DNA of 64,000 bases from positions 254,303 through 318,302 of the forward strand of contig NIVC01000302.1 of NCBI GenBank assembly GCA_002269645.1. The letters are read 5' to 3'. Below the pieces are notes generated by a model. The model had not been told where the DNA came from. It made no database searches and was given only the letters and a program-made list of their open reading frames with translations. The stretch is from Macrostomum lignano. Lineage: Eukaryota. Positions 14,304 to 58,700 of the stretch are shown here, piece by piece. Each line of letters opens with the position of its first letter. Position 1 is the stretch's first letter. Both the position numbers and the translations under genes were made by a program.

Positions 14304-16800
14304 AACCGAATTCCATCCTGGCACTTGAACAATATAGATAACCTAGACACTACTTAGACACTACCGCACTATTTTAGTGTCTAAAATTTGGGGGCTACAC
14401 AGAGCTTGGTAATTAGAAAGTGAAGTAGAATGAAGTCTGAAGAATCTAGAATTAGATATATCAACACAGTAGCTTAATGTAATTATGACTAGGGTCTAGG
14501 CCTGTATGTGTTTCAAATAATTTTTATGTTCTCTTTCCTATCTAACATTACAAACGATAGATAGGCCATTTGAAACTTGATGAACGATCTAGCAGCAGGG
14601 ATTATGAAAATAAAATACTTACACGAGGCACTTCGAGCAACTACAGTTGGAGAAACAAGTCGCAGAATCTTGTGCTTAAAAAGTCCAGAGCTAAAGCATG
14701 GGCCTTTTGCAAGAACTTTCAAGCTAGCAGACATTTTAAGCAATTGTTTTATTTTTTATTGATAATATTGTATAATAAACTGAGGAACTTCAGACTTCGT
14801 ATTTCGTGAATGTAAAAATATATTTTCAGGTGTAGATATCGTTTATGCGAAGGAAGAGGTGTTTAAAGTTTTTCCAGGAAAGTAGCATGAACCTTTGTCC
14901 ATTTTAACAAATCAAATTACTTAAACCGAATGCCACAAGAACTTCTAGAACATTTATTTCAGATATATCAAAAGAAAATAAACAGCTGTTTTTATACAGC
15001 AGCAGTTTACATATATTTGTCATAAATTTTCTTTGCTATTTTCTTAGCGTTGCGTTTAAAGATATATGTACTAGTATATTTCCATCTTCAATCAATTAGA
15101 CATTAATAAGAAGCCAGTGATACGGCATTGGAACCTAATACGGCATTGGAGCTTCTTAAGCAATCTCTAAGGAGCAAAGGTGAAGTAACGCTTATTATAA
15201 TTGGGTTTATAAAGCACAATATAGTTCTGCTGCTGCTAAAGTAATTATTCGTTTCTTTTTATACTACCATCTGATCGAGATTCTTGGCAATTTATGTATG
15301 AAATAAAACTATCTGACATGCATGTTTACATTTTCCATGTTCCACTACAATTATACATGTCCATAATGTACTTTAAAATAATGGACAGAGTACACCCGGA
15401 TCGCAGGGAGGAAGCTGGGGAGTGTGCAAAAATAATATTAGTGCTGGGGAGGCCCAGGGCGTGCCTACATCAAACACATGTGATTTTACTGCAAGCATGT
15501 CCAAAACTTGACATACATGTGCGCTTGCAGCCATGACAATCTGCATGGTGGCGCGGCCGTGTATACGAGCTATATTACCCTGCAATTAAAGATCGCGAAG
15601 TCGCAATGATGAAGCCTTCGGTGCAATTACGATCAACAATCAAGCAAGGAGAGACCCTTGGCATTGGACATTAGTTAGCATGGAGCATGTACGTATAATC
15701 TTCTACATGTATTTGAATATGATTGTTGCATCTTTGCAGCATTTTTGCCTATGTTGATTGGCCTTCTCCTTAAGAAGCAAAACGTACACAGTTTACTGAG
15801 TCTATAGTAAGTGAACATGATAACTGATTCAAATATGATTACACCTCGTGCGTCAGCCATGCATCTTCAATCTTGTAACAAAGGACCACTGGAACACTTC
15901 GTTATATAGTCTAGTAGTCCTTGTCTTGTAAGCGCACTATCGTTACGCAGTACATATACATGTAGTGCTGTACGTCATATGCTGGTACATGTACATTTAC
16001 ACGTCAGAATTTCTCTATAAAAACAAAATGAATAGCAGAGAGAAAATCTTCAATTAAAAGTATAAAGCCTTTTGAAACTGTGATATAGTGACACGATGGA
16101 CTTTCAAATAGTTTGTGTGTACTCATACTCGTTGACTCACTAGCAGTGGCGTTTGTTATTTACCGACTTAGTGAATTCTATTCAACCCCACCCCATGCGC
16201 CCGTGCATCTGTCTGCACCCACCACCTCATTGCTATAACTAATAAATATTGTCAGCCTAGCTCTCAAGCGAGCACCTACAATTCAACACTGTTGCCTCAG
16301 TTAATAAAGTTATCACAGAAACAAACAAAAGGTATAATATTTTTACAAAATGACACAAAAAGGACGGATAAAATTTAGGCGTATGCTGCACGTACACACT
16401 TATATTTTTGGGTTGCTCATTTTCACAGATAATTCAGGCATTACATGAAGATTCGCACACGAGCGTCAGTAGTCTGTCGCATATTTTCCAAACTGACACC
16501 TGAACCAGCCTGAGTTGGCTCAAGGGAAATATCCCTTACAATTTTTTGGTGCAGGCACACGAAATTCGAAAGTTACACATGCTAAAGTTCTGTTGCGCAC
16601 CTCTCAAACAATAATGAAATCGTCAGCGAGCCAGAACATTCGAGATATTCAACAATTCTGCCAGAAGGTCCCAGTCCCAGCCTTGCCAAGCTCAAATTTC
16701 ATCAGCACGTCGATCACATGTGCTCGTATCTCAGCTCTGATGAAGGCACTTGTTGATGACCCAGAAGTTCCTCCTGGGTGAAGGCCAGTGACCAACGAAG

Positions 16801-20877: not shown

Positions 20878-23150
20878 AACCAGGTAATTTGGCGACAGGT
20901 TGACTTGGCGACAGGCAATTCAGCAACAAGTCAATTCAGCAACAGTCAGTTTGGCCACATACAACCAAGGAGTGGTTAAAACAGAGGGGCAGTTAAGTTG
21001 TCATCCATTGTGTTGTGTTTTCATGTTAAATAAGCCAAAGTGGTAAGCCTCACATACCACACATATAGCTCGTACATATACTATGCTTTTCCTGGTGTGT
21101 TACATATGCTTATAGTAAAACAAATGTTGAGACCCTAAGAACAATTGTTGAACAGACTATCAAAAATCCTGGTTGAATTGTGTATTTTGTAATGATCGTG
21201 AATTACATATACATGTGTACATGTACTTCTCTAATCACGTAGAGGTGCTTTCACAAGGTCGAAATTTCACAACATTGAAAACTCTAGCAGAAGACTTCAT
21301 AAGGTCGAAATTTCACAACATCAAAAACTCTAGCAGAAGACTTAATAATTGTAAGCCTTCAAGGCTTTTCTATATCCTATTGTTGTTTAGTAGGCCTATA
21401 TATGTTGTAGGTGTTTTTCTGTTTGTCACTTAGTCTAATTTATCCTAACCAGTCATTGCCAAAGTTATAGGGCTTTTTTTTCTTTTCAAAGTTTTTCTCT
21501 TTTCCCCTAAATTTATCCTACTTCTGATACCAAATTTTAGGTGCTTTTTACTGCTCTAATTCCAAAATGCTTCTCAACTATATAGCTAAACTTACAGCTT
21601 ATGTAAACTAACCCATCGTCCCAGTAGTCATAAGACACTTAGCAGAGCACTCAGCACTCCTTGACGTTGAACTACTTAAAGAAGAGGTGATTAAAAACAT
21701 CTGAAACAAAGCTATTAAAACAAAAAAATAATAATATAAACATTAACACAATAAAGACTTTATTTTTCTACATTGTAAAATTTTGATATTTTCATACTTG
21801 AAGCTGTTAAATTCTCAGTTTTTACATTGTAAAATTTTGATCTTATGAAAGTGGCTGCTATTTGAGTTTTTGACCTTGTGAAATTTCGACCTTATGAAGT
21901 CTCTTGCTAAAGTTTTCAATGTTGTGAAATTTCGATCTTGTGAAATTTCGACCTTATGAAGTCTCTTGCTAAAGTTTTCAATGTTGTGAAATTTCTACCT
22001 TATGAAAGTGGCTGCTTTTCAAGTTTTCAATGTTGTGAAATTTCGACCTTGTGAAATTTCGACCTTATGAAAGTGGCTGCTTTTCGAGTTTTCGATGTTG
22101 TGAAATTTTGACCTTGTGAAATTTCTACCTTGTGAAAGTGGCTGCTTTTCGAGTTTTCAATGTTGTGAAATTTTGACCTTGTGAAATTTCGACCTTATGA
22201 AGTCTCTTGCTAAAGTTTTCAATGTTGTGAAATTTTGACCTTGTGAAATTTCGACCTTATGAAAGTGGCTGCTTTTCGAGTTTTTGATGTTATGAAATTT
22301 TGACCTTGTGAAATTTCAACCTTATGAAAGAGTGTGCTTTCAACATTGTGAAATTTCGAGTTTGTGAAACCCCCCCCATCACGTAAACTACGTCAACTTA
22401 TATGGTTGATTGCCTTTGACACGGTTGTCCCTACTCCGTTGGGACCAGTGGCAGATTTAAAGGGGGGAGGTGCACAGGGCGCGCACCCCCATTGAGTCTG
22501 ATTTTATTTATTTTTTATATGCTAAATATGCAATATCGTGTACATATACATGTACATAATATACACTTATAAGTACCTTTAGTAATCTGCATGTCCCCCC
22601 ATTCAAAATTTTCTGGATCCATATGTACCTGGTCTGGACAAGTCTAAGACTGCTAAGGGGGCATATGCATGCACCTCTTTGAAAACGTGTTATTCGGCAT
22701 GATTAAAACAAAATATTACCTTATTTTGTAGACCATGTCACTGCAGAAGAAAGATTAAGGCTCTGAAAGAGCCCGTTGCTTCTATATATTTAGCAAGCAA
22801 CGAAGACCCTTGAGGGTCTCATACACTGTTACGCAAAGCAAAAGGGGCAAAGGGAAAAGGAAGGAATGAACAAGCAAGCACTGGGTGACGCATCAAAACA
22901 AAGAAAATTCCTACCCCACTTCCCCCTCAACCCCTCTCACACAACACAACTACACTGTATATAATTACACCTTACTTGAATGGCAAGGACTATATAATGA
23001 CTATATGAGTAATGCAATATTTTAAATTTTAACGAGTGTTGTATATAGCTTTCTTTAACCTTCAGCATTCACCAAATTGCCTTTCGCGGAACTGACTTGT
23101 TGCCGAATTGGTTGTCGCTGAATTAGCTTGTCGCTGAATTAACTGGAAGC
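20878..23150. mobile_element. Mirror copy of the foldback-type relic, including the 21810-22370 array
   Basis: Reverse complement of 10990-13262. Confidence 0.45.
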
Positions 23151-27970: not shown

Positions 27971-37192
<9,222 letters not shown>

Positions 37193-37249
37193 TGCGGCTG
37201 CATGAAGATTGGAAACCAGTTTCATAAATACAGGTAATTGTCTCTGTAA

Positions 37250-40146: not shown

Positions 40147-47603
<7,457 letters not shown>

Positions 47604-47789
47604 GCTTGACAAGCTGGCGGCTGGAAATTTAGTGCAATTCAGTGCAAATATGATTGTCTCTCACCTCTTTACTGCATGCTTATTGTAAATCATAACTTAG
47701 GCTTGCTTTAAACCAATGAAAGCACTATTTTATACATTTTTCGACACGACAAACAGTCAACAGTCGATGAAAACAAAAACTGTTGAATT

Positions 47790-49510
47790 CCACAATCTCA
47801 AAAGCTTCACTTCATAATCTCAAAAGCTTCACTTCACAATCTCAAAAGCTTCACTTCACAATCTCAAAAGCTTCACTTCACAATCTCAAAAGCTTCACTT
47901 CACAATCTCAAAAGCTTCACTTCACAATCTCAAAAGCTTCACTTCACAATCTCAAAAGCTTCACTTCACAATCTCAAAAGCTTCACTTCACAATCTCAAA
48001 GCTTCACTTCACAATCTCGAAGCTTCACTTCACAATCTCGAAGCTTCACTTCACAATCTCAAAGCTTCACTTCACAATCTCGAAGCTTCACTTCACAATC
48101 TCGAAGCTTCACTTCACAATCTCAAAAGCTTCACTTCACAATCTCAAAAGCTTCACTTCACAATCTCGAAGCTTCACTTCACAATCTCGAAGCTTCACTT
48201 CACAATCTCAAAAGCTTCACTTCACAATCTCAAAAGCTTCACTTCACAATCTCGAAGCTTCACTTCACAATCTCAAAAGCTTCATTTCACAATCTCAAAA
48301 GCTTCACTTTACAATCTCAAAAGCTTCACTTCACAATCTCAAAAGCTTCACTTCACAATCTCAAAAGCTTCACTTCACAATCTCAAAAGCTTCACTTCAC
48401 AATCTCAAAAGCTTCACTTCACAATCTCAAAAGCTTCACTTCACAATCTCGAAGCTTCATTTCACAATCTCAAAAGCTTCACTTCACAATCTCAAAAGCT
48501 TCACTTCACAATCTCGAAGCTTCACTTTACAATCTCAAAAGCTTCACTTCACAATCTCAAAAGCTTCACTTCACAATCTCGAAGCTTCATTTCACAATCT
48601 CAAAAGCTTCACTTCACAATCTCAAAAGCTTCACTTCACAATCTCGAAGCTTCACTTTACAATCTCAAAAGCTTCACTTCACAATCTCAAAAGCTTCACT
48701 TCACAATCTCGAAGCTTCATTTCACAATCTCAAAAGCTTCACTTCACAATCTCAAAAGCTTCACTTCACAATCTCGAAGCTTCACTTTACAATCTCAAAA
48801 GCTTCACTTCACAATCTCAAAAGCTTCACTTCACAATCTCGAAGCTTCATTTCACAATCTCAAAAGCTTCACTTCACAATCTCAAAAGCTTCACTTCACA
48901 ATCTCGAAGCTTCACTTTACAATCTCAAAAGCTTCACTTCACAATCTCAAAAGCTTCACTTCACAATCTCGAAGCTTCACTTCACAATCTCAAAAGCTTC
49001 ACTTCACAATCTCAAAAGCTTCACTTCACAATCTCAAAAGCTTCACTTCACAATCTCGAAGCTTCACTTTACAATCTCAAAAGCTTCACTTCACAATCTC
49101 GAAGCTTCACTCAACAAGCTCGAAACTTCACTTCACAATCTCGAAGCTTCACTCAACAAGCTCGAAACTTCACTTCACAATCTCGAAGCTTCACTCAACA
49201 AGCTCGAAACTTCACTTCACAATCTCGAAGCTTCACTCAACAAGCTCGAAACTTCACTTCACAATCTCGAAGCTTCACTCAACAAGCTCGAAACTTCACT
49301 TCACAATCTCGAAGCTTCACTCAACAAGCTCGAAACTTCACTTCACAATCTCGAAGCTTCACTCAACAAGCTCGAAACTTCACTTCACAATCTCGAAGCT
49401 TCCCTCAACAAGCTCGAAACTTCACTTCACAATCTCGAAGCTTCACTCAACAAGCTCGAAACTTCACTTCACAATCTCGAAGCTTCCCTCAACAAGCTGG
49501 AAACTTCACA
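47790..49510 (+). repeat. 21/22-bp minisatellite (TCACTTCACAATCTCAAAAGCT), switching to a ~40-bp higher-order unit after ~49090; CTNNBL1-MSH2 spacer
   Basis: Direct reading; source of the 584-aa KLHFTIS ORF. Confidence 0.97.
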
Positions 49511-49984
49511 AGCTTGAAACTAAGTCCTGAAAATTAAACAATTACAGTAAATGAATGAAACGGAAATAAGATCACACGCATATACGATTGAACAATGAAC
49601 ATAGAATCATATACTACTATTAGTATCGATCAGTGCTACATTTACTTACTAAGCGCATTATATGAAAAACAGGCCATTATAACTATAGAGCGGACAAGCA
49701 CATGATGAATACAGGCTACAATTAGTCCGACTCTGTAACCGACTGTCCCTTCAATATATGCATCAGGTATAATACAAAAGCATGTCAAAGCAGGCTGACA
49801 AAAACTAAAAAAAACTGAAGCGGCACAAAAAGTGACTATTGTGTTTTTTGACAGTGTAATTTGTTTTTTTATATTCCGAAGTTTGTAAAGAAATCTAAGA
49901 GCCCGTTTATAAGTTGAAAACTTATTAACCCATGAGATTTAGCTGACTTTCCTGTGTCCAATGTCTGAATCGGATTTCGAGCAC

Positions 49985-50560
49985 TATTACGAGTAATAAC
50001 ATCCTTAACAGCACTATTAACAGCATCCTTAACGGCACTATTAACATCATCCTTAGCGGCACTATTAACAGCATCCTTAACAGCACTATTAACAGCATCC
50101 TTAACGGCACTATTAACATTATCCTTAGCGGCACTATTAACAGCATCCTTGACAGCACTATTAACAGCATCCTTGACAGCACTATTAACAGCATCCTTAA
50201 CGGCACTATTAACAGCATCCTTGACAGCACTATTAACAGCATCATTAACAGCACTATTAACAGGATTTTTGTAACAGCACTATTAACAGCATCCTTGACA
50301 GCACTATTAACAGCATCCTTAACGGCACTATTAACAGCATCCTTGACAGCACTATTAACAGCATCATTAACAGCACTATTAACAGGATTTTTGTAACAGC
50401 ACTATTAACAGCATCCTTGACAGCACTATTAACAGCATCCTTAACGGCACTATTAACAGCATCCTTGACAGCACTATTAACAGCATCCTTGACAGCACTA
50501 TTAACAGCATCATTAACAGCACTATTAACAGTATCCTTAACAGCACTATTAACAGCATCA
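49985..50560 (+). repeat. 24-bp minisatellite (GCACTATTAACAGCATCCTTRACR) downstream of CTNNBL1
   Basis: Direct reading. Confidence 0.95.
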
Positions 50561-50678: not shown

Positions 50679-53600
50679 TCACTCGGCCAATCCGAATCGT
50701 TCTTTAAACACGGCCAGCAGCGGCTCCAGCCGGGCCTTCTCCTCTGCGTCATCGCTGTGCGCCAGGTGCTCTTTGACAACTCCGTGCACGGCGGGCAGCG
50801 GACTAGATCGCATGTTGAACATCTGGCGGACTGGCCGAACAACGCCGGCATCTGGCGGCGACATGGCGCACACTTGGAGCAGGATTAGGTCCACCAGCTG
50901 CAGGGTGAACAGGCCCATTTCCAGTCTGAGGACAAGTAGGAAAATTAAACACTAGAATAGCCTGGTGGAGTCATATAGGATTTGTTTTAAAAAGATGATA
51001 CTAAATTGGCTTGTCATATTTTTTTCAAATCTCACTAATCTTTTCAACAAGTATGATTGCCTTATCAAGACAGGTAATTTTGTAATCCCCTACAGATAAA
51101 CCGCTAATCTCATAGATAATCTGCTAATCTCCTACAGAAAATCCGCTAATCTCCTATAGAAAATCCGCTAATCTCGTATAGAAAATCCGCTTATCTCCTA
51201 TAGAAAATCCGCTAATCTCCTATAGAAAATCCGCTAATCTCCTACAGAAAATCCGCTTATCTCCTATAGAAAATCCGCTTATCTCCTATAGAAAATCCGC
51301 TTATCTCCTATAGAAAATCCGCTAATCTCCTATAGAAAATCCGCTAATCTCCTATACGAGCGTAGATGATCAGCTAATCTCCTATAGATGATCAGCTAAT
51401 CTCCTATAGATGATCAGCTAATCTCCTATACGAGCGTAGATGATCAGCTAATCTCCTATACGAGCGTAGATGATCAGCTAATCTCCTATACGAGCGTAGA
51501 TGATCAGCTAATCTCCTATAGATGATCAGCTAATCTCCTATAGATAATCCTATATATAGAGCTCGAGTGAAGCTCGATTGTCTCCTATAGGTATAATTCG
51601 CTAATTTCCTATAGATAATCCGCTCATCAGCTATAGATATAATCCGCTAATCTCCTATAGATGATCTGCTAATCTCCTATGGACAATTCGCTAATCTCCT
51701 ATCGATAAAATCCACAAAGCCCCAACGCCAACAGTGACCCGCTAATCTCAGCAGCGTTAATCGTCTAATTCCCGCACCGTCTCAGATAGACTTCCTCCTC
51801 CAGCTCCTCCTCAGTGCTGGCATTCCACAGCTCCGGCTGGCGCCGTTCAGCCAGCAGCCGCCTGTCAGCCGCTTTGACAGAATCGCGCCATTTAAAATGC
51901 AGCTCAGCCAGCCGCTCCATCTTGGCGTGATCGTTCTCAACAAACTTAGCCAGAATCCTAGTCTTGTGCGTAGGCGAATTAGCGCAGTGCCGCAACAGAT
52001 TGTGCAATATTGAGCACAGGTGCTCTTCAATCTCTTGTACTGAGAAGCCGCTTTTTTTCGGTTTTGGCGGTCGCATAAACACCGGGAAGATAGTTCTTAG
52101 GCCGAGAATGTCCACGAATTTTAAGGCGTTATCCGCACCGTCTGGCCCGTTCAGTGCGTAGTCCAGCACCTGCGGTGGTTATGTGAGTGAGTCAGTGAGT
52201 GAGTGAGTAAGTGAGTGAGTGAGTGAGTCAGTTAGTGAGTCAGTGAGTCAGTCAGTGAGTCAGTCAGTCAGTCAGTCAGTCAGTCAGTCAGTCAGTGAGT
52301 CAGTCAGTCAGTGAGTCAGTCAGTCAGTCAGTCAGTGAGTCAGTCAGTCAGTCAGTGAGTCAGTCAGTGAGTGAGTGAGTCAGTCAGTCAGTGAGTCAGT
52401 CAGTGAATCAGTGAGTCAGTCAGTCAGTCAGTCAGTGAGACAGTCAGTGAGTCAATAAGTCAGTCAGTCAGTGAGTCAGTCAGTGAGTCAGTGAGTGAGT
52501 CAGTGAGTGAGTCAGTCAGTCAGTGAGTCAGTCAGTGAGTCAGTGAGTCAGTCAGTGAGTCAGTGAGTCAGTCAGTGAGTCAGTCAGTCAGTGAGTCAGT
52601 CAGTCAGTCAGTGAGTCAGTCAGTGAGTCAGTGAGTCAGTCAGTGAGTCAGTCAGTCAGTGAGTCAGTCAGTCAGTCAGTGAGTCAGTCAGTGAGTCAGT
52701 GAGTCAGTCAGTGAGTCAGTCAGTGAGTCAGTCAGTGAGTCAATAAGTCAGTCAGTCAGTCAGTCAGTCAGTCAGTCAGTCAGTCAGTCAGTCAGTCAGT
52801 CAGTCAGTCAGTCAGTCAGTCAGTCAGTCAGTCAGTCAGTCAGTCAGTCAGTCAGTCAGTCAGTCAGTCAGTCAGTCAGTCAGTCAGTCAGTCAGTCAGT
52901 CAGTCAGTCAGTCAGTCAGTCAGTCAGTCAGTCAGTCAGTCAGTCAGTCAGTCAGTCAGTCAGTCAGTCAGTGAGTCAGTAAGTGAGTCAGTCAGTGAGA
53001 CAGTCAGTGAGTCAATAAGTCAGTGAGTCAGTCAGTGAGTCAGTCAGTGAGTCAGTCAGTGAGTCAGTCAGTGAGTCAGTCAGTGAGTCAGTCAGTGAGT
53101 CAGTGAGTCAGTGAGTCAGTGAGTCAGTGAGTCAGTCAGTCAGTCAGTCAGTCAGTCAGTCAGTCAGTCAGTCAGTCAGTCAGTGAGTCAGTCAGTGAGT
53201 CAGTCAGTGAGTCAGTCAGTGAGTCAGTCAGTGAGTCAGTCAGTGAGTCGGTCAGTGAGTCAGTGAGTGAGTCAATAAGTCAGTCAGTCAGTCAGTCTGT
53301 GAGTCAGTCAGTGAGTCAGTCAGTGAGTCAGTCAGTGAGTCAGTCAGTGAGTCAGTGAGTCAGTGAGTCAGTCAGTCAGTCAGTCAGTTAGTCAGTGAGT
53401 CAGTCAGTCAGGCTACCTTCAGAGCCGACGGCCTGGCAACCCGCTTCTCCCTGAGGATCAGATTCATCAATTGCAGCCCTTCGCCTCGCAGGAATCGGTC
53501 TTTATTAGCCTTGGCTAGCAGGGCGCTGCACAGACAATTAAAGAGATTCTCCATCAGCTCGCGCTCCTCAGAATCTGCCGGATCCTGCCGTTTATAATGG

Positions 53601-55156
53601 GCCAGCTGGTTGAGCAGAATATCAACGCCTTTGAGCTCTCCTAGTAGCAGACGATTGGGCTCGGAGCTTTGCAATAGTATGGCCAATAGCTCGCTAGCGT
53701 ACAGCTTATTGGGACTGAAGCCCCGCTTGCCAATGCGTTTAAGCAAGCAGGCTAGCAGGCCTTGCTTAGACGCCATCTGCTCCAGGCAGTCCGGTCGGGC
53801 CTCGCACAGGTTCTCGATTATGCCTGCGATTGGGGAGAGCAGTGACCAGATTGTCAGTCAGAAAGTGGCCAGCTTGTCAGGAAGAGTGACCAGACTGTCA
53901 GTCAGAGAGTGACCAGACTGTCAGTCAGAGAGTGACCAGATTGTCAGTCAGAGAGTGATCAGATTGTCAGTCAGAGAGTGACCAGATTGTCAGTCAGAAA
54001 GTGGCCAGCTTGTCAGTCAGAGAGTGACCAGATTGTCAGTCAGAGAGTGACCAGACTGTATCAGTCAGAAAGTGACCAGATTGTCTGTCAGATAGTGACC
54101 AGATTGTTAGTTAGAAAGCGGTTAGAATATCAGGCAGAGTGACCAAATGGTCATTTTGAGTGACCAGATGTCAGTCAGAAAATAGCCAGATTGTCAGTCA
54201 GTGACAAGATTGTCAGGCAAAGTGACCAGGATTGCTAGTCAGAGAGTGACCAGTATAGACTGTCAGGGTGCCCAATTCGTCATTCAACAGAGTAAACAGA
54301 CGTTTAGCTTAACTGAACAAGTGAAACAGACCTCCGTGAAGGAGTGATTAGTCATACGAGCCATAATTCTCCGAACAACACAAGCACAGCAACATCACTA
54401 ACCAAAAGACGAATGCACTCCGTCAGCCTCCTCCTTGATAGTCTCATCCAGACGGTCAAGATTCTGCACCAGCATCATGACCAGCTGGGCATCCATCAGT
54501 TTGGCAATCAGCTGTTCAGTATCGTCCGGATTCTCGGCCAATACATCAGTGTCTGTCATCTCTTCTATTAGATCAATGACAGCAATAGAAATGTCGGTGT
54601 TCTCGTGCAGCACCAACTGCAGCAGGGTGTCCAGTACAGGCAGTTCGCACAGCACAGGATAAGCGGCTGGCACAGTGGGCAAGGTGTGCAGCTCCTGCAG
54701 AGCTGAGTGCAGTTCAACCTCGGACTCCATGAACTTCTCCGGATTATCCGAATATTTCACTCGAAGTTCGGCATTCCTAGCCGCTCGCTTCTCCAGTTGA
54801 AGCATCAGCAGGCGCATCCCGGACACGCTGTCAGCCTTTGACGGCTTGGAAGCGTCGGCATCGTCGCTGTCGACTTTCGCGTCATCGCCCTCCGCATTGT
54901 CGTCGGCTTCGAGGGCGCGCAGGACGGCCTCTTTATTAAGGCCAGCTGGTTGCTGCGGCGCCGATGCAGAGGGCGGCACTCGAGATGATCGAGCGACGCC
55001 AGCGCCGGTACCCGACGCTGAGGCCGAGGCGGCGGCGGCGGCAACGGCCAGACGAGCTCGCTTCCGCTCCACGTAGCCTGTGTCCGTGTTGTCCGAGAAA
55101 CGCGTCCGGCGCTGGCCGGGCGTGGCCGGCTTGTAGGACAGAACCTCGGTGATGTC
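50679..55156 (-). CDS. CTNNBL1: Beta-catenin-like protein 1 (PRP19/CDC5L complex). Exons 55156-54403, 53823-53417, 52169-51778, 50924-50679; initiator ATG absent from the first exon
   Basis: RNAELRVKYSDNPEKFMESEVELH, HENTDISIAVIDL, KEEADGVH, NKLYASELLAILLQ, GEGLQLMNL, KFVDILGLRTIFP. Phases 1,0,2 are consistent. Confidence 0.94.
51080..51715 (+). repeat. ~22-bp repeat (AATCTCCTATAGAAAATCCGCT) in the last CTNNBL1 intron
   Basis: Direct reading. Confidence 0.92.
52185..53410 (+). repeat. (AGTC/AGTG)n microsatellite filling a CTNNBL1 intron
   Basis: Direct reading. Confidence 0.98.
53835..54265 (+). repeat. 23-bp repeat (GAGTGACCAGATTGTCAGTCAGA) in the first CTNNBL1 intron
   Basis: Direct reading. 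Confidence 0.92.
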
Positions 55157-55279
55157 CTGCAAATGTAAGGGAAATTTTATATCTCGATTCTCGATGGTAA
55201 AGGAATTGGGCCGGAGCCTACACGTAGCTTCAGTTTCAGGCGCCCTGGAATGTTAGCAGTGAGAAGCAGGGTCTGAGAA

Positions 55280-55460
55280 TTTAGTATCTGGGAGGGTTGT
55301 AGCACGGCAACTGAGGATCTGGGAGGGTGGCAGCACAGCAACTGAGGATCTGGGAGGCTGGCGGTGGCCCAGCAACTGAGGATCTGGAGGCTGGCAGCAC
55401 AGCAACTGAGGATCTGGGAGACTGGCTGCACAGTAACTGAGGATCTGGGAGGCTGGCGGT
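55280..55460 (+). repeat. Short degenerate array related to the VWA5A intron 5 28-mer (CAACTGAGGATCTGGGAGGCTGG)
   Basis: Shares the core motif with 29333-30355. Confidence 0.85.
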
Positions 55461-55715
55461 GGCGTCCATATACTAAAAATAGCAACTAAATTTATTTTAA
55501 ATCATTTAAAATATCAAACCACGATTAAAAAAGTATTATTTGTACTGTCCAAAATTTCAACTAACGAAGGCGTTAATAAATAAATTAATATACATATAAG
55601 TAGTAATAACACACATCCATAAATGCACATTGCGTCAATTGTTAAATTGGTGTAAATTTAGTTAACAGAAAACACAGATTGCCAAAAAATGAGCACATCA
55701 TCTAGCGAACGGTAT

Positions 55716-58700
55716 CTAGGACTCTGAGCTTGCCAACGTGTTGCATTTCAACAGGTAGTGCATAGCGGAATCGCTGAGCGACAATTTGAGTTTACGATCA
55801 ACTAATCGAACAAGCGAACGCCTGTTGAAGCCAGCGGATGGGGCCAGGCAGCGGGCGAACTCAGCCCGGTCCAAGGACTCCTGACGGCCGAACGGGCGAC
55901 AGCTGGGCAGCGGCTGGCGAAGGTCTCGGAGTAGACGACCGAGACCTGGCCGCGGCTCTATCAGTGGCAGTTGGTTGCTAGGTAACTTAGCTGATCCTCC
56001 TCCTGACAGCGACTGGCCAATATGGTTGCTAGGCAACTCGGCTGATCCTCCTCCTGACAGCGACTGGCCAATCTGGTTGCTAGGCAACTCGCTGATCCTC
56101 CTCCTGACAGCGACTGGCCAATCTGGTTGCTAGGCAACTCGGCTGATCCTCCTCCTGACAGCGACTGGCCAATCTGGTTGCTAGGCAACTCGGCTGATCC
56201 TCCTCCTGACAGCGACTGGCCAGTCTGGTTGCTAGGCAACTCGGCTGATCCTCCTCCTGACAGCGACTGGCCAATCTGGTTGCTAGGTAAAGAAAGCCGA
56301 GCTAACAGGCTGAGCCCCGACGACGCCAACTGATCAGCCGCCTCGGCGCATCGGCGACGACGTCTACGCAGCCAGTCGGCGAAGGCGAGGACGTCGGCAG
56401 ATTGCGAAATCGTATTCAGCGTAGAAGCAGCAGAATTAGTTCCTCCTAGAAGCAGCAGTGCAGCATCAATAGGCGCCGGCGGTACCGCAATCGACAATCG
56501 ACAATCACCGGCGCCAGATTCCGGCAATACAAAGTGCACCAGGTTCAACAGTTGGCGAATGTCGCCACGGCAGGCGTCGACCAGTTCGATTGCCGCGTCG
56601 GCCGACAATCGACAGCCAAGAGCCAGGCAGACCACGCGAGCGTAGGCCGCCACGAGAGGTCGACTGGGCCGGCGTAGCTTAAAAATCGGCGCCGTGTCGG
56701 TCAGGCCGAGACCGCGTCGTAGCGACTCGGCGTCGGCGGCGGCCAACAGCAGCGGCTTGCGACTGGATGCGCAGACGCTGGACACTAGGCGACGCAACGA
56801 TGGCTCGTCGTCCAACGGTTGATCGGCATCGTCTAGCAAGATTAGCCAGGAGCTGCTGACGGATAGGGCCTGCGGATTTGAGAATGCGTTGGTTGGCGCT
56901 TTCGCAAATTAAAGCACGCACACGTGTGGGCACATCAGGAATCGAACCCGGGACTTTTAACAGCCTAATCCAAGATACGTTTGCCAAAGTAATGGAGCTC
57001 CTGTCTATGGTAGCAAGGCTGGCACAGTAGCATTTAATTTCGTTCATAGCATCACCCATAGATCTTATATTCCCTAAATGCGCCACTTTGTATTGCAGCA
57101 ATAGGGAAAGCGCGACCGCTGTTTTTCGTCACTTGTGCGAAAAAAAGCCGACATGGGTTGCTTGAATTTTGAGTTCAGTAGCTTAGGTACGCTATTTTTT
57201 GAGAATGTGATAGAAATTTTCATAAATTAAATAAAAAGCTACTCAATCCAATTAAAAATGATGCATGCACTGTAGAGACTACTGACGAAATTGAGTTCAG
57301 TAGTTGATTCTCGCGCTGTCGCGAGTTGCTTCTTCTTTTACATTAGCTTCTATGGCCACATAAGCGGTGAATGATGGCCCATCTTGTGTATATATGATCT
57401 TTGGCTTCACCCCCAGATCTTAATTCAGACATGACTGACACAAGCAGTGAGGACGAGAGCAATGTTTCATTTGCAACTGCTGCAGGGGAGCAAGATCAGT
57501 CAAATAATCGTGGACCATTTGCTAAGACTGTCGAACAAACGCCAAGGGACCTCGTGATGGAAGCGGAGTTTTGACATGTTGAAATGCTCTTTTTTGTTTT
57601 GTTATAGTTGAACAGATTGCATTTGTGACGTCACCTTGTATTGGCACAGTGAAATTTGTTTATATAAATTGTATTACACAGCTGTAACTCATGACTGGGT
57701 TTCATAGTCGCTATGGATCAAGTTGATGCTTGTTGGACCAAATTAAATGCCGCTGTGCCAGCCTTGCTACCATAGACAAAAGCTCCGTTGCATTGGCAGA
57801 AATTGTATCGTATATAGCGGACGTTTCAATTTTCATTAGAATGAATGGGTAAACTTGTTCAACCTGAATTTTTTTTTGCCCCGCAATTTAGCAAATATAG
57901 AAAGTAGAACATTTTTTTAACCTTATTAGCCTGCGCACATCAGTGATATCGTGCATGAAACTATAGACTTTGAGATTAGGATTTAATTTTTTGCCTCTGT
58001 TGACAGGCCCTTCTAGTCGTCAGTTTTAGATAGAAACTAGCCCAATAAAACACGTTTAGGTAATCGGCATTAGCACGTGATGTTTTGCAGGTGTTTCGCA
58101 ATTTTTTAATAACATCGTTGAGTTTTATGTAAATGAAACTAGTTTGCTATGATGGCCGATATAAACATTTTATACAGTTGCTGTATTCGATTTTATTTGA
58201 CACAAATTGCGTCAATTTGCTTTACAAGCGCTAATTTGCAGGCGCTCTGCACTGACCCCTCTCAGGCTGCTGCTGCCTGCCACTCCCGCCTGTTCTGCGA
58301 GCGCGTTTGTGCAATGGGTCTCCCCTCTGGGCCTAAACCTAAATAAACTGTAGATGTATATTAAGATATAAATAATAAATTATGTATTTATTTAGAATTC
58401 CAGTGCCATTTGACAGCCTGGGTCTGAGTTCAGGATGTCAAAATTAAAGTTAATGTGCAGAGTTGCCATCAGCGCCAGTAGTGAGACGATGTTGCCCGCA
58501 AATAGTGTGCCTAAAACCTTCCTGCGAATATTTTTATACAGTAAATTCACTCAATAGGCCATGAACCGCAAGCTTACAGGTGCGCCATCGAGCGAATCAG
58601 TCTCATCTTCAGCGTCCGAATCGTTGCGATGACGCCACTTTCGCTCCACCTGACAACACGTGGCCGCCTGGTGCAGCCGCTGCGCCAGCTTAGCCCCGTG

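What the first reader, a model, noticed from the sequence alone, without database searches (positions are those of the whole stretch)
55140..55180. CTNNBL1 begins at codon 2 right after a splice acceptor: candidate start codon supplied by a trans-spliced leader
Seen: the minus strand reads TTTGCAG|GAC ATC ACC GAG GTT CTG TCC TAC AAG CCG (DITEVLSYKP), and I found no ATG|GT micro-exon in 55160-55716. Established: vertebrate CTNNBL1 starts M-D-V-G-E-L-L-S-Y-Q-P, so only the Met is missing; flatworm spliced leaders end in AUG, which can act as the initiator. Inference: the protein's first residue is encoded at the SL RNA locus, so the gene depends on trans-splicing at exactly this AG.
Basis: partly seen in the sequence, partly recalled or inferred. 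Interest (0 to 1): 0.75.

Follow-up and report, generated by a model that had tools for sequence, protein, structure and literature searches.

The report
Flatworm gene borrowing its start codon
In the flatworm Macrostomum lignano, the CTNNBL1 gene has no start codon of its own and almost certainly receives its AUG from the spliced leader added to its mRNA; this mechanism has been documented in flatworms since 2006, so the case is real but ordinary.

Summary
On the minus strand, ...CCCTTACATTTGCAG|GACATCACC... puts an AG acceptor at 55158-55157. The CTNNBL1 reading frame starts at 55156 with D-I-T-E-V-L-S-Y-K-P. No in-frame ATG lies upstream before a TAA, and no ATG|GT occurs in the 559-nt spacer.

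The window is Macrostomum lignano. My four-exon model (599 aa) is 100% identical to GenBank PAA77058.1, 'Mlig001294g5, partial', which starts at the same D. So does a second genomic copy.

That annotation comes from RNA-seq. Spliced-leader (SL) reads were trimmed, and transcripts were cut at the mapped SL sites. The M. lignano SL ends in ...TTGCATG, which is in frame here and gives M-DITEVLSYKP. Of the 118 best orthologues, 101 start M-[DEN]-[VI]-x-[ED]-[LIV]-[LM].

The gene lies 559 nt downstream of a same-strand gene, a typical operon position. The acceptor fits the species' trans-splice motif [T/C]TNCAG.

I could not reach any SL-bearing read or peptide.

The mechanism is already established: the flatworm SL 3'-terminal AUG acts as initiator Met (Cheng et al. 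2006), with dozens to hundreds of genes in Schistosoma and Echinococcus. This is a further member of a known kind. Interest is low.

The parts
55157..55180 (-). 3' splice (trans-splice) acceptor: pyrimidine-rich tract ATAAAATTTCCCTTACATTTGCAG, with AG at 55158-55157
   Evidence: TTGCAG fits the M. lignano trans-acceptor motif [T/C]TNCAG (PMC8629364). It is identical in two other genomic copies apart from one A/C difference at -22.
54403..55156 (-). CTNNBL1 coding exon 1. It starts with codon 2 (GAC = D), has no ATG, and ends at donor TTTTG|GTTAGT
   Evidence: tblastn of orthologues starts at their residue 2. GenBank PAA77058.1 and PAA85852.1 start here.
53417..53823 (-). CTNNBL1 coding exon 2
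   Evidence: The spliced product is 100% identical to P0035.
51778..52169 (-). CTNNBL1 coding exon 3
50679..50925 (-). CTNNBL1 coding exon 4, with stop TGA at 50681-50679
55159..55715 (-). Spacer between the upstream gene's stop codon and the acceptor. It comprises the upstream gene's AT-rich 3'UTR and the outron (intercistronic stretch). It contains no GT[GA]AG donor.
   Evidence: Alignment of three copies.
55491..55496 (-). The only AATAAA in the spacer. It is the likely poly(A) signal of the upstream gene, about 335 nt before the acceptor.
   Evidence: Its function is inferred.
55286..55457 (-). 31-nt tandem repeat (5.5 copies) inside the outron. Copy number differs between genomic copies.
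55716..55718 (-). Stop codon (TAG) of the same-strand upstream gene (655-aa product with a weak RFC1-like AAA lid match)
55615..55620 (-). ATGGAT followed by GTGTGT. This is the only upstream ATG that could mimic the orthologue N-terminus through a cis splice (MD+DITEV). It is a rival and is not favoured.
   Evidence: It lies upstream of the AATAAA, so inside the neighbour's 3'UTR. Its donor is non-canonical, and no annotation uses it.
55810..55811 (-). Weak GT donor (CTT|GTTCGA) inside the upstream gene's last exon. The ab initio fusion model UniProt A0A1I8FYJ3 uses it to reach the same acceptor.
   Evidence: (P0156 reads ...FNRRSL|DITEV...) and sequence

Best explanation
The window is Macrostomum lignano. 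CTNNBL1 here is a downstream gene of a polycistronic transcription unit (GenBank name Mlig001294.g5).

Its pre-mRNA is most likely processed by spliced-leader trans-splicing at the AG at 55158-55157. This joins the 35-nt SL (...AATTTATTGCATG) directly to GAC at 55156. The last three bases of the SL then serve as the initiator AUG, so the protein is M-DITEVLSYKP... (600 aa), with the first residue templated at the SL RNA locus.

The genomic position where orthologues carry ATG now reads CAG, the acceptor itself.

Shown:
- the anatomy, the frame and the identity of the gene;
- the absence of any genomic start codon;
- the operon-like context;
- that the transcript-based annotation starts at this base in two copies.

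Inferred:
- that the SL is joined at this AG for this particular gene;
- that ribosomes start at the SL AUG.
For: 1. Species and SL. The spliced model is 100% identical over 599 aa to M. lignano PAA77058.1. The M. lignano SL ends in ATG, and 30% of genes are trans-spliced, with conserved genes enriched among them (PMC8629364).

2. No genomic start. There is no in-frame ATG upstream. The next in-frame Met is residue 114 of the 600-aa protein (113 of the genomic ORF).

3. Frame. SL plus exon reads ...IYCMDITEVLSYKP with no stop.

4. Homology. 101 of 118 orthologues begin M[DEN][VI]x[ED][LIV][LM], and alignment to them starts at their residue 2.

5. Annotation. PAA77058.1 and PAA85852.1 are both 'partial', 599 aa, and start at D immediately after TTTGCAG. 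The annotation pipeline trims SL reads, maps them, cuts transcription units at SL peaks and calls ORFs with TransDecoder (PMC5730564). In the same annotation the neighbouring MutS CDS runs to the transcript's 5' end (SSMSATDE / [11 protein letters not shown]). A CDS start therefore marks the transcript start to within 0-2 nt.

6. Acceptor and context. TTGCAG fits [T/C]TNCAG. The spacer has no GT[GA]AG donor. A same-strand gene ends 559 nt upstream, or about 380 nt after removing the tandem repeat, which is below the published 1-kb operon threshold.

7. Precedent. SL-AUG initiation has been shown in flatworms (Cheng et al. 2006, as cited in PMC12582326, PMC5832876, PMC3510090 and PMC7653826).
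Against: I could not examine any SL-containing read, cDNA or peptide for this gene. The protein collection holds no transcript-derived 'MDITEV...' sequence.

The 'partial' flag is compatible with SL trimming but does not prove it.

The context of the SL AUG (TGC AUG G) lacks a purine at -3.

Two older ab initio UniProt models reach the same acceptor by cis-splicing. A0A1I8FYJ3 fuses CTNNBL1 with the upstream gene. A0A1I8FAJ8 carries an MPRASTGVPL exon.
Confidence: 0.88

Rival explanations
1. A cis-spliced 5' exon in the spacer supplies the ATG. The best candidate is ATGGAT|GTGTGT at 55620-55615 spliced to the AG at 55157, giving MD-DITEV...
For: This ATG is conserved in all three genomic copies. 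An in-frame junction is possible. The gene's own donors (GTTAGT, GTAGCC, GTGCGG) are not all canonical either.
Against: It would add a residue relative to the 101 orthologues that start M-D-[VI].

It lies upstream of the only AATAAA, so inside the neighbour's 3'UTR.

The whole spacer is about 95% conserved between copies, so conservation of this ATG says little.

Both transcript-based CDSs start at 55156 and are flagged partial. A 5' exon would have extended or completed the ORF.
Confidence: 0.03
2. The acceptor is used in cis from the upstream gene's last exon (donor CTT|GTTCGA, GT at 55811-55810). This would produce a fusion protein of the RFC1-lid-like gene and CTNNBL1, as in UniProt A0A1I8FYJ3. 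At most this would be a minor isoform alongside trans-splicing.
For: The 1209-aa model P0156 reads ...FNRRSL|DITEVLSYKP. Parasitic flatworms share acceptors extensively between cis- and trans-splicing (PMC12582326).
Against: P0156 is an ab initio model from an older assembly. The RNA-seq-based annotation keeps two separate genes: a 655-aa product ending ...ASSES* and a 599-aa CTNNBL1. The donor GTTCGA is weak (one search gives the GT[G/A]AG motif). Gene predictors commonly fuse neighbouring operon genes.
Confidence: 0.04
3. The SL is added but its AUG is not used, or the mRNA is not trans-spliced. Translation would then start at the first genomic in-frame AUG (Met114, ...SGMRLLML) or at a non-AUG codon such as TTG at 55162.
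For: The SL AUG has a weak -3 position. In Echinococcus not all in-frame SL AUGs are thought to be used when another AUG lies nearby (PMC3510090).
Against: Here the next AUG is 113 codons away. Those codons are open and begin with the conserved motif DI-x-E-V-L-S-Y-K-P.

Exon 1 shows only 5 substitutions and no indel among three copies, whereas the flanks are full of indels.

TTG at 55162 lies in the acceptor tract, upstream of the annotated transcript start.
Confidence: 0.04
4. The missing ATG is an assembly or annotation artefact, and the true locus has ATG where the window reads CAG.
For: The older M. lignano assemblies contain many indel errors. Model P0001, for example, is frame-shifted.
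Against: Three independent sequences read the identical ...CATTTGCAG|GACATC: the window and contigs NIVC01000768.1 and NIVC01000302.1.
Confidence: 0.01

Closest known systems
[quoted passage not shown]
   Same: The SL ends in AUG. The acceptor sits directly before codon 2. The SL AUG is in frame. The orthologue N-terminus is reproduced only if the SL Met is used. In E. granulosus, 143 of 187 SL-bearing clusters are full-length with the SL ATG, and 35 S. japonicum genes are known to use it (PMC3510090).
   Different: The species differs: this is a free-living macrostomorph rather than a parasite. The gene, CTNNBL1, did not appear in the papers and supplements I searched. For this gene the step is inferred, not shown.
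M. lignano SL trans-splicing and operons (Wudarski et al. 2017, PMC5730564; Ustyantsev and Berezikov 2021, PMC8629364)
   Same: The 35-nt SL, the acceptor motif [T/C]TNCAG, a conserved gene, and a same-strand neighbour closer than 1 kb after repeat adjustment. The gene name ends in .g5, meaning it is one gene within a multi-gene transcription unit.
   Different: In the text I searched, those papers do not discuss which genes take their start codon from the SL. A later Macrostomum paper notes only that the final ATG of the SL is likely a start codon (PMC10468722).
GenBank PAA77058.1 and PAA85852.1 (BOX15_Mlig001294g5 and BOX15_Mlig011045g1, 'partial')
   Same: The same protein, 100% and about 99.5% identical, starting at the same D with no Met.
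   Different: The records treat the 5' end as incomplete rather than as completed by the SL AUG.
slORFs: open reading frames created by SL addition in nematodes, ascidians and euglenids (slORFfinder, PMC9851317)
   Same: A start codon contributed by the leader changes or creates the ORF of the recipient mRNA.
   Different: In those taxa the start is mostly a near-cognate NUG codon or a new ORF. Here a canonical AUG restores the ancestral N-terminus of a conserved protein.

Membership tests
SL-AUG-initiated trans-spliced flatworm mRNA | The species has an SL RNA whose exon ends in AUG followed by a GU donor | not testable with these tools
   Taken from the literature: the M. lignano SL is CGG...TTGCATG with GTAAG after it (PMC8629364). 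No SL gene lies in the window (0 matches with up to 3 mismatches; no Rfam hit).
SL-AUG-initiated trans-spliced flatworm mRNA | The first coding exon is preceded by a 3' splice acceptor with no matching cis donor upstream (an outron) | tested here: met
   The acceptor is TTTGCAG|GAC at 55157. The 559-nt spacer has no GT[GA]AG, and no ATG is directly followed by GT.
SL-AUG-initiated trans-spliced flatworm mRNA | The SL is physically joined at that AG in mature mRNA | not testable with these tools
   The evidence is indirect. RNA-seq/SL-site-based GenBank CDSs of two copies begin at this exact base and are flagged partial (method). No transcript-derived sequence is available.
SL-AUG-initiated trans-spliced flatworm mRNA | The SL AUG is in frame with the main ORF, with no intervening stop | tested here: met
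   SL plus exon translates as VSYCEDSIYC-M-DITEVLSYKPATPGQRRTRF.
SL-AUG-initiated trans-spliced flatworm mRNA | No alternative AUG lies near the 5' end, and the N-terminus matches orthologues only with the SL Met | tested here: met
   The next in-frame AUG is residue 114. 101 of 118 orthologues start M[DEN][VI]x[ED][LIV][LM].
SL-AUG-initiated trans-spliced flatworm mRNA | Translation actually starts at the SL AUG (peptide or ribosome-footprint evidence) | not testable with these tools
   No proteomic or ribosome-profiling data were reachable.
CTNNBL1 (beta-catenin-like protein 1, Pfam PF08216) | Full-length match to the CTNNBL domain and to solved human CTNNBL1 | tested here: met
   Pfam CTNNBL E = 6.8e-160, profile positions 10-469 of 474. 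Human CTNNBL1 structures 4mfv and 7abi match at E about 1e-146.
Downstream gene of an M. lignano operon | A same-strand neighbour less than 1 kb away after subtracting repeats, with the downstream gene trans-spliced | tested here: inconclusive
   The distance criterion is met: 559 nt from stop codon to acceptor, of which 172 nt is tandem repeat (threshold). Trans-splicing itself is inferred. The second copy is named .g1, so the transcription-unit structure may differ between copies.

The most novel reading that the evidence does not exclude
The CTNNBL1 acceptor may serve two roles. Most transcripts would be SL trans-spliced and take their Met from the leader. A fraction would be cis-spliced from the last exon of the upstream RFC1-lid-like gene (GT at 55811-55810), giving an in-frame fusion protein as in UniProt A0A1I8FYJ3. 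One AG would then arbitrate between two proteins. Alternatively, loss of the genomic ATG (now CAG) may be ancient and shared across flatworms, making CTNNBL1 a conserved gene obligately dependent on the SL AUG.
Probability: 0.07. Interest if true: 0.4.

Novelty: new member of a known kind. Interest (0 to 1): 0.2.

Why it matters
The value is mostly practical. The case shows that GenBank's '5' partial' M. lignano proteins, such as PAA77058.1, can be complete proteins whose Met is templated at the SL RNA locus. Annotation pipelines that trim the whole leader, ATG included, therefore mislabel them systematically.

CTNNBL1 is also a clean test case. The next AUG is 113 codons away, and the N-terminal motif is invariant across Bilateria. 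M. lignano is transgenesis-competent, so SL-AUG initiation could be tested there.

It does not open a new question. The mechanism has been known since 2006.

Tried and rejected
1. Transcript-derived proteins. I looked for a 'MDITEV...' sequence in the 5.8-billion-protein collection using exon 1 and the full length and the cluster listing. Only genome-annotation proteins were found.

2. Literature. I searched papers and supplements for CTNNBL1, Mlig001294 and Mlig011045 and found nothing.

3. SL RNA gene in the window. There were no matches with up to 3 mismatches and no Rfam family.

4. Human N-terminus. I tried to display it through a PDB search with the first 38 residues. That gave no CTNNBL1 hit because the query was too short, so I used database orthologues instead.

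5. The MPRASTGVPL exon of UniProt A0A1I8FAJ8. It is absent from the window, L001 and L002 in all six frames. I treat it as an artefact of an older frame-shifted model.

6. Upstream acceptor-like sites. The site at 55245 (TTCCAG|GGCGCCTGA) would give ATG GGC GCC TGA, which is unproductive.

7. Substitution pattern among the three copies. It rests on too few changes (5 in 754 nt) to measure selection.

Full report
**What is there**

On the minus strand the window reads TATAAAATTTCCCTTACATTTGCAG|GACATCACCGAGGTTCTGTCCTACAAGCCG. The AG is at 55158-55157 and the reading frame begins at 55156 with DITEVLSYKP.

Reading upstream in frame gives 32 sense codons, none of them ATG, before TAA at 55255-55253. 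The codon directly before GAC is CAG. Eight ATGs lie on this strand between the upstream gene's stop (TAG, 55718-55716) and the acceptor, and none is followed directly by GT.

**The gene**

Orthologue alignments and splice sites give four coding exons: 55156-54403, 53823-53417, 52169-51778 and 50925-50679. They total 1800 nt, which is 599 codons plus a stop.

The product matches Pfam CTNNBL at E = 6.8e-160 and solved human CTNNBL1 structures at about 1e-146. It is 100% identical over its full length to GenBank PAA77058.1, 'hypothetical protein BOX15_Mlig001294g5, partial [Macrostomum lignano]'. That record has 599 aa and itself starts with DITEV.

A second genomic copy, PAA85852.1 (Mlig011045g1, also 'partial', 599 aa), starts at the same residue. 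In both contigs of assembly GCA_002269645.1 the CDS begins immediately after ...CATTTGCAG.

The window is 94-98% identical to contig NIVC01000768.1 in non-coding DNA, and tandem-repeat lengths differ. It is therefore another assembly or haplotype of the same locus.

**Why the deposited CDS is 'partial'**

The Mlig_3_7 annotation was built from RNA-seq. Reads carrying the spliced leader were trimmed of the leader and mapped. The TBONE pipeline cut transcription units at the resulting trans-splice peaks, and TransDecoder called ORFs (PMC5730564).

In that annotation, 5'-partial ORFs run to the first bases of the transcript. The neighbouring MutS gene, for example, is deposited as SSMSATDE... or [11 protein letters not shown].... 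A CDS that starts at D immediately after an AG, in two copies, therefore means that the trimmed transcript starts at 55156, give or take 2 nt.

Had the transcript continued upstream, the open frame would have added up to 32 more residues. Had a 5' exon with an ATG existed, the ORF would have been complete. This is strong but indirect evidence for an SL site at this AG.

**The leader**

The M. lignano SL is CGGTCTCTTACTGCGAAGACTCAATTTATTGCATG, 35 nt, followed by GTAAG in the SL RNA gene. About 30% of genes are trans-spliced, most of them conserved genes, and the trans-acceptor motif is [T/C]TNCAG (PMC8629364). The site here, TTGCAG, fits that motif.

Joining the SL to the exon gives the frame ...IYC-M-DITEVLSYKPATPGQRR, with no stop and no other AUG in the leader.

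**Homology**

Among the 118 best orthologues, 101 begin M-[DEN]-[VI]-x-[ED]-[LIV]-[LM]. Their position-by-position consensus is M-D-V/I-G-E-L-L-S-Y/F-K/Q-P.

The flatworm sequence D-I-T-E-V-L-S-Y-K-P aligns with residues 2-11, and tblastn alignments start at orthologue residue 2 opposite base 55156. Only the Met is missing, and the SL supplies exactly that.

The next in-frame AUG is 113 codons downstream. Exon 1 differs at only 5 of 754 positions, with no indel, among three copies, while the flanks are riddled with indels.

**Context**

A same-strand gene ends 559 nt upstream. Its product has 655 aa and only a weak match to the RFC1-like AAA lid domain. The spacer holds the neighbour's AT-rich 3'UTR with a single AATAAA at 55496-55491. 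It also holds a 31-nt tandem repeat at 55286-55457 whose copy number varies between copies. There is no canonical GT[GA]AG donor.

After subtracting the repeat, the distance falls well under the 1-kb operon threshold used for this species. Downstream on the same strand lie a MutS homologue and a VIT/VWA gene. The name '.g5' marks one gene within a multi-gene transcription unit.

**Rivals**

- **Cis 5' exon.** ATGGAT|GTGTGT at 55620 could in principle give MD-DITEV. It adds a residue, has a poor donor, lies inside the neighbour's 3'UTR, and is used by no annotation.
- **Fusion with the upstream gene.** UniProt A0A1I8FYJ3 fuses the upstream gene to CTNNBL1 through a weak donor (CTT|GTTCGA) and the same acceptor. 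It is an ab initio model, and the RNA-seq-based two-gene annotation contradicts it, though a minor isoform cannot be excluded.
- **The MPRASTGVPL model.** The N-terminal exon of UniProt A0A1I8FAJ8 is found nowhere in the window or in either contig.
- **Downstream or non-AUG initiation.** This would discard or fail to explain the conserved N-terminus.
- **Assembly error.** This is excluded by three identical sequences.

**Comparison with what is known**

[quoted passage not shown] 2006, cited).

In Echinococcus granulosus, 143 of 187 SL-bearing clusters are full-length with the SL ATG. For some, the SL Met is required to match orthologue N-termini. Thirty-five S. japonicum genes are known users of the SL AUG (PMC3510090). 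For Macrostomum, the final ATG of the SL has been noted as a likely start codon (PMC10468722).

The present case meets every defining feature that could be tested here. Two features could not be tested: physical SL joining and translation from the SL AUG.

**Verdict**

The phenomenon is a further member of a well-known kind, so interest is about 0.2.

Its main use is as a clean test gene. It is also a reminder that 'partial' M. lignano CDSs that start right after an acceptor may in fact be complete.

Noticed in passing
window 31000-60400, minus strand: Four same-strand genes lie in a row: an RFC1-lid-like 655-aa gene, CTNNBL1, a MutS homologue (Pfam MutS_III/IV/V at about 42900-45600) and a VIT/VWA-domain gene (about 34100-37200). 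This is consistent with one polycistronic transcription unit, Mlig001294.
   Followed up: partly
window 52186-53411; also 51083-51713, 53836-54253 and 50000-50559: The CTNNBL1 introns consist almost entirely of tandem repeats. (AGTCAGTCAGTC) x 102 fills intron 2, a 22-nt unit x 27 lies in intron 3, a 23-nt unit x 18.6 lies in intron 1, and a 24-nt unit x 23 lies just past the stop codon. These arrays account for most of the length differences between the window and the GenBank contigs.
   Followed up: partly
window 55972-56287, minus strand: A 51-nt tandem repeat (6.2 copies, 96% matches) lies inside the coding region of the upstream gene and encodes LPSNQIGQSLSGGGSAE six times. The UniProt model P0156 has seven copies of the unit, so the repeat number in the protein seems to vary between copies.
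   Followed up: no
L001 about 16770-16800 versus L002 about 23130-23150 (start of the MutS gene); the corresponding window region was not located (near 47200 by the alignment): The two GenBank copies differ at the apparent trans-splice acceptor of the MutS gene. L002 reads TTTCCAG|CC, and L001 reads TTTCATGCC. In L001 the annotated CDS starts a few bases further down, after GCCAG. This may be a copy-specific shift of the SL site. In L002 the SL ATG would be out of frame with the genomic ATG.
   Followed up: no
window 47783-49537: A tandem array of about 1.75 kb with a roughly 21-22-nt period lies between CTNNBL1 and the MutS gene. It reads as a spurious 584-aa ORF on the plus strand.
   Followed up: no
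L002 16729-19143: The second genomic copy carries a 756-aa gene with a weak hAT-transposase dimerisation domain between CTNNBL1 and the MutS gene. It is absent from L001. I did not look for it in the window.
   Followed up: no
UniProt A0A1I8FAJ8, A0A1I8FYJ3 and A0A1I8G9T2 (P0001, P0156, P0036): Three UniProt models of this gene from the older M. lignano assembly are each wrong in a different way: one is frame-shifted with an invented first exon, one is fused to the upstream gene, and one is truncated. All three nevertheless use the same acceptor.
   Followed up: yes
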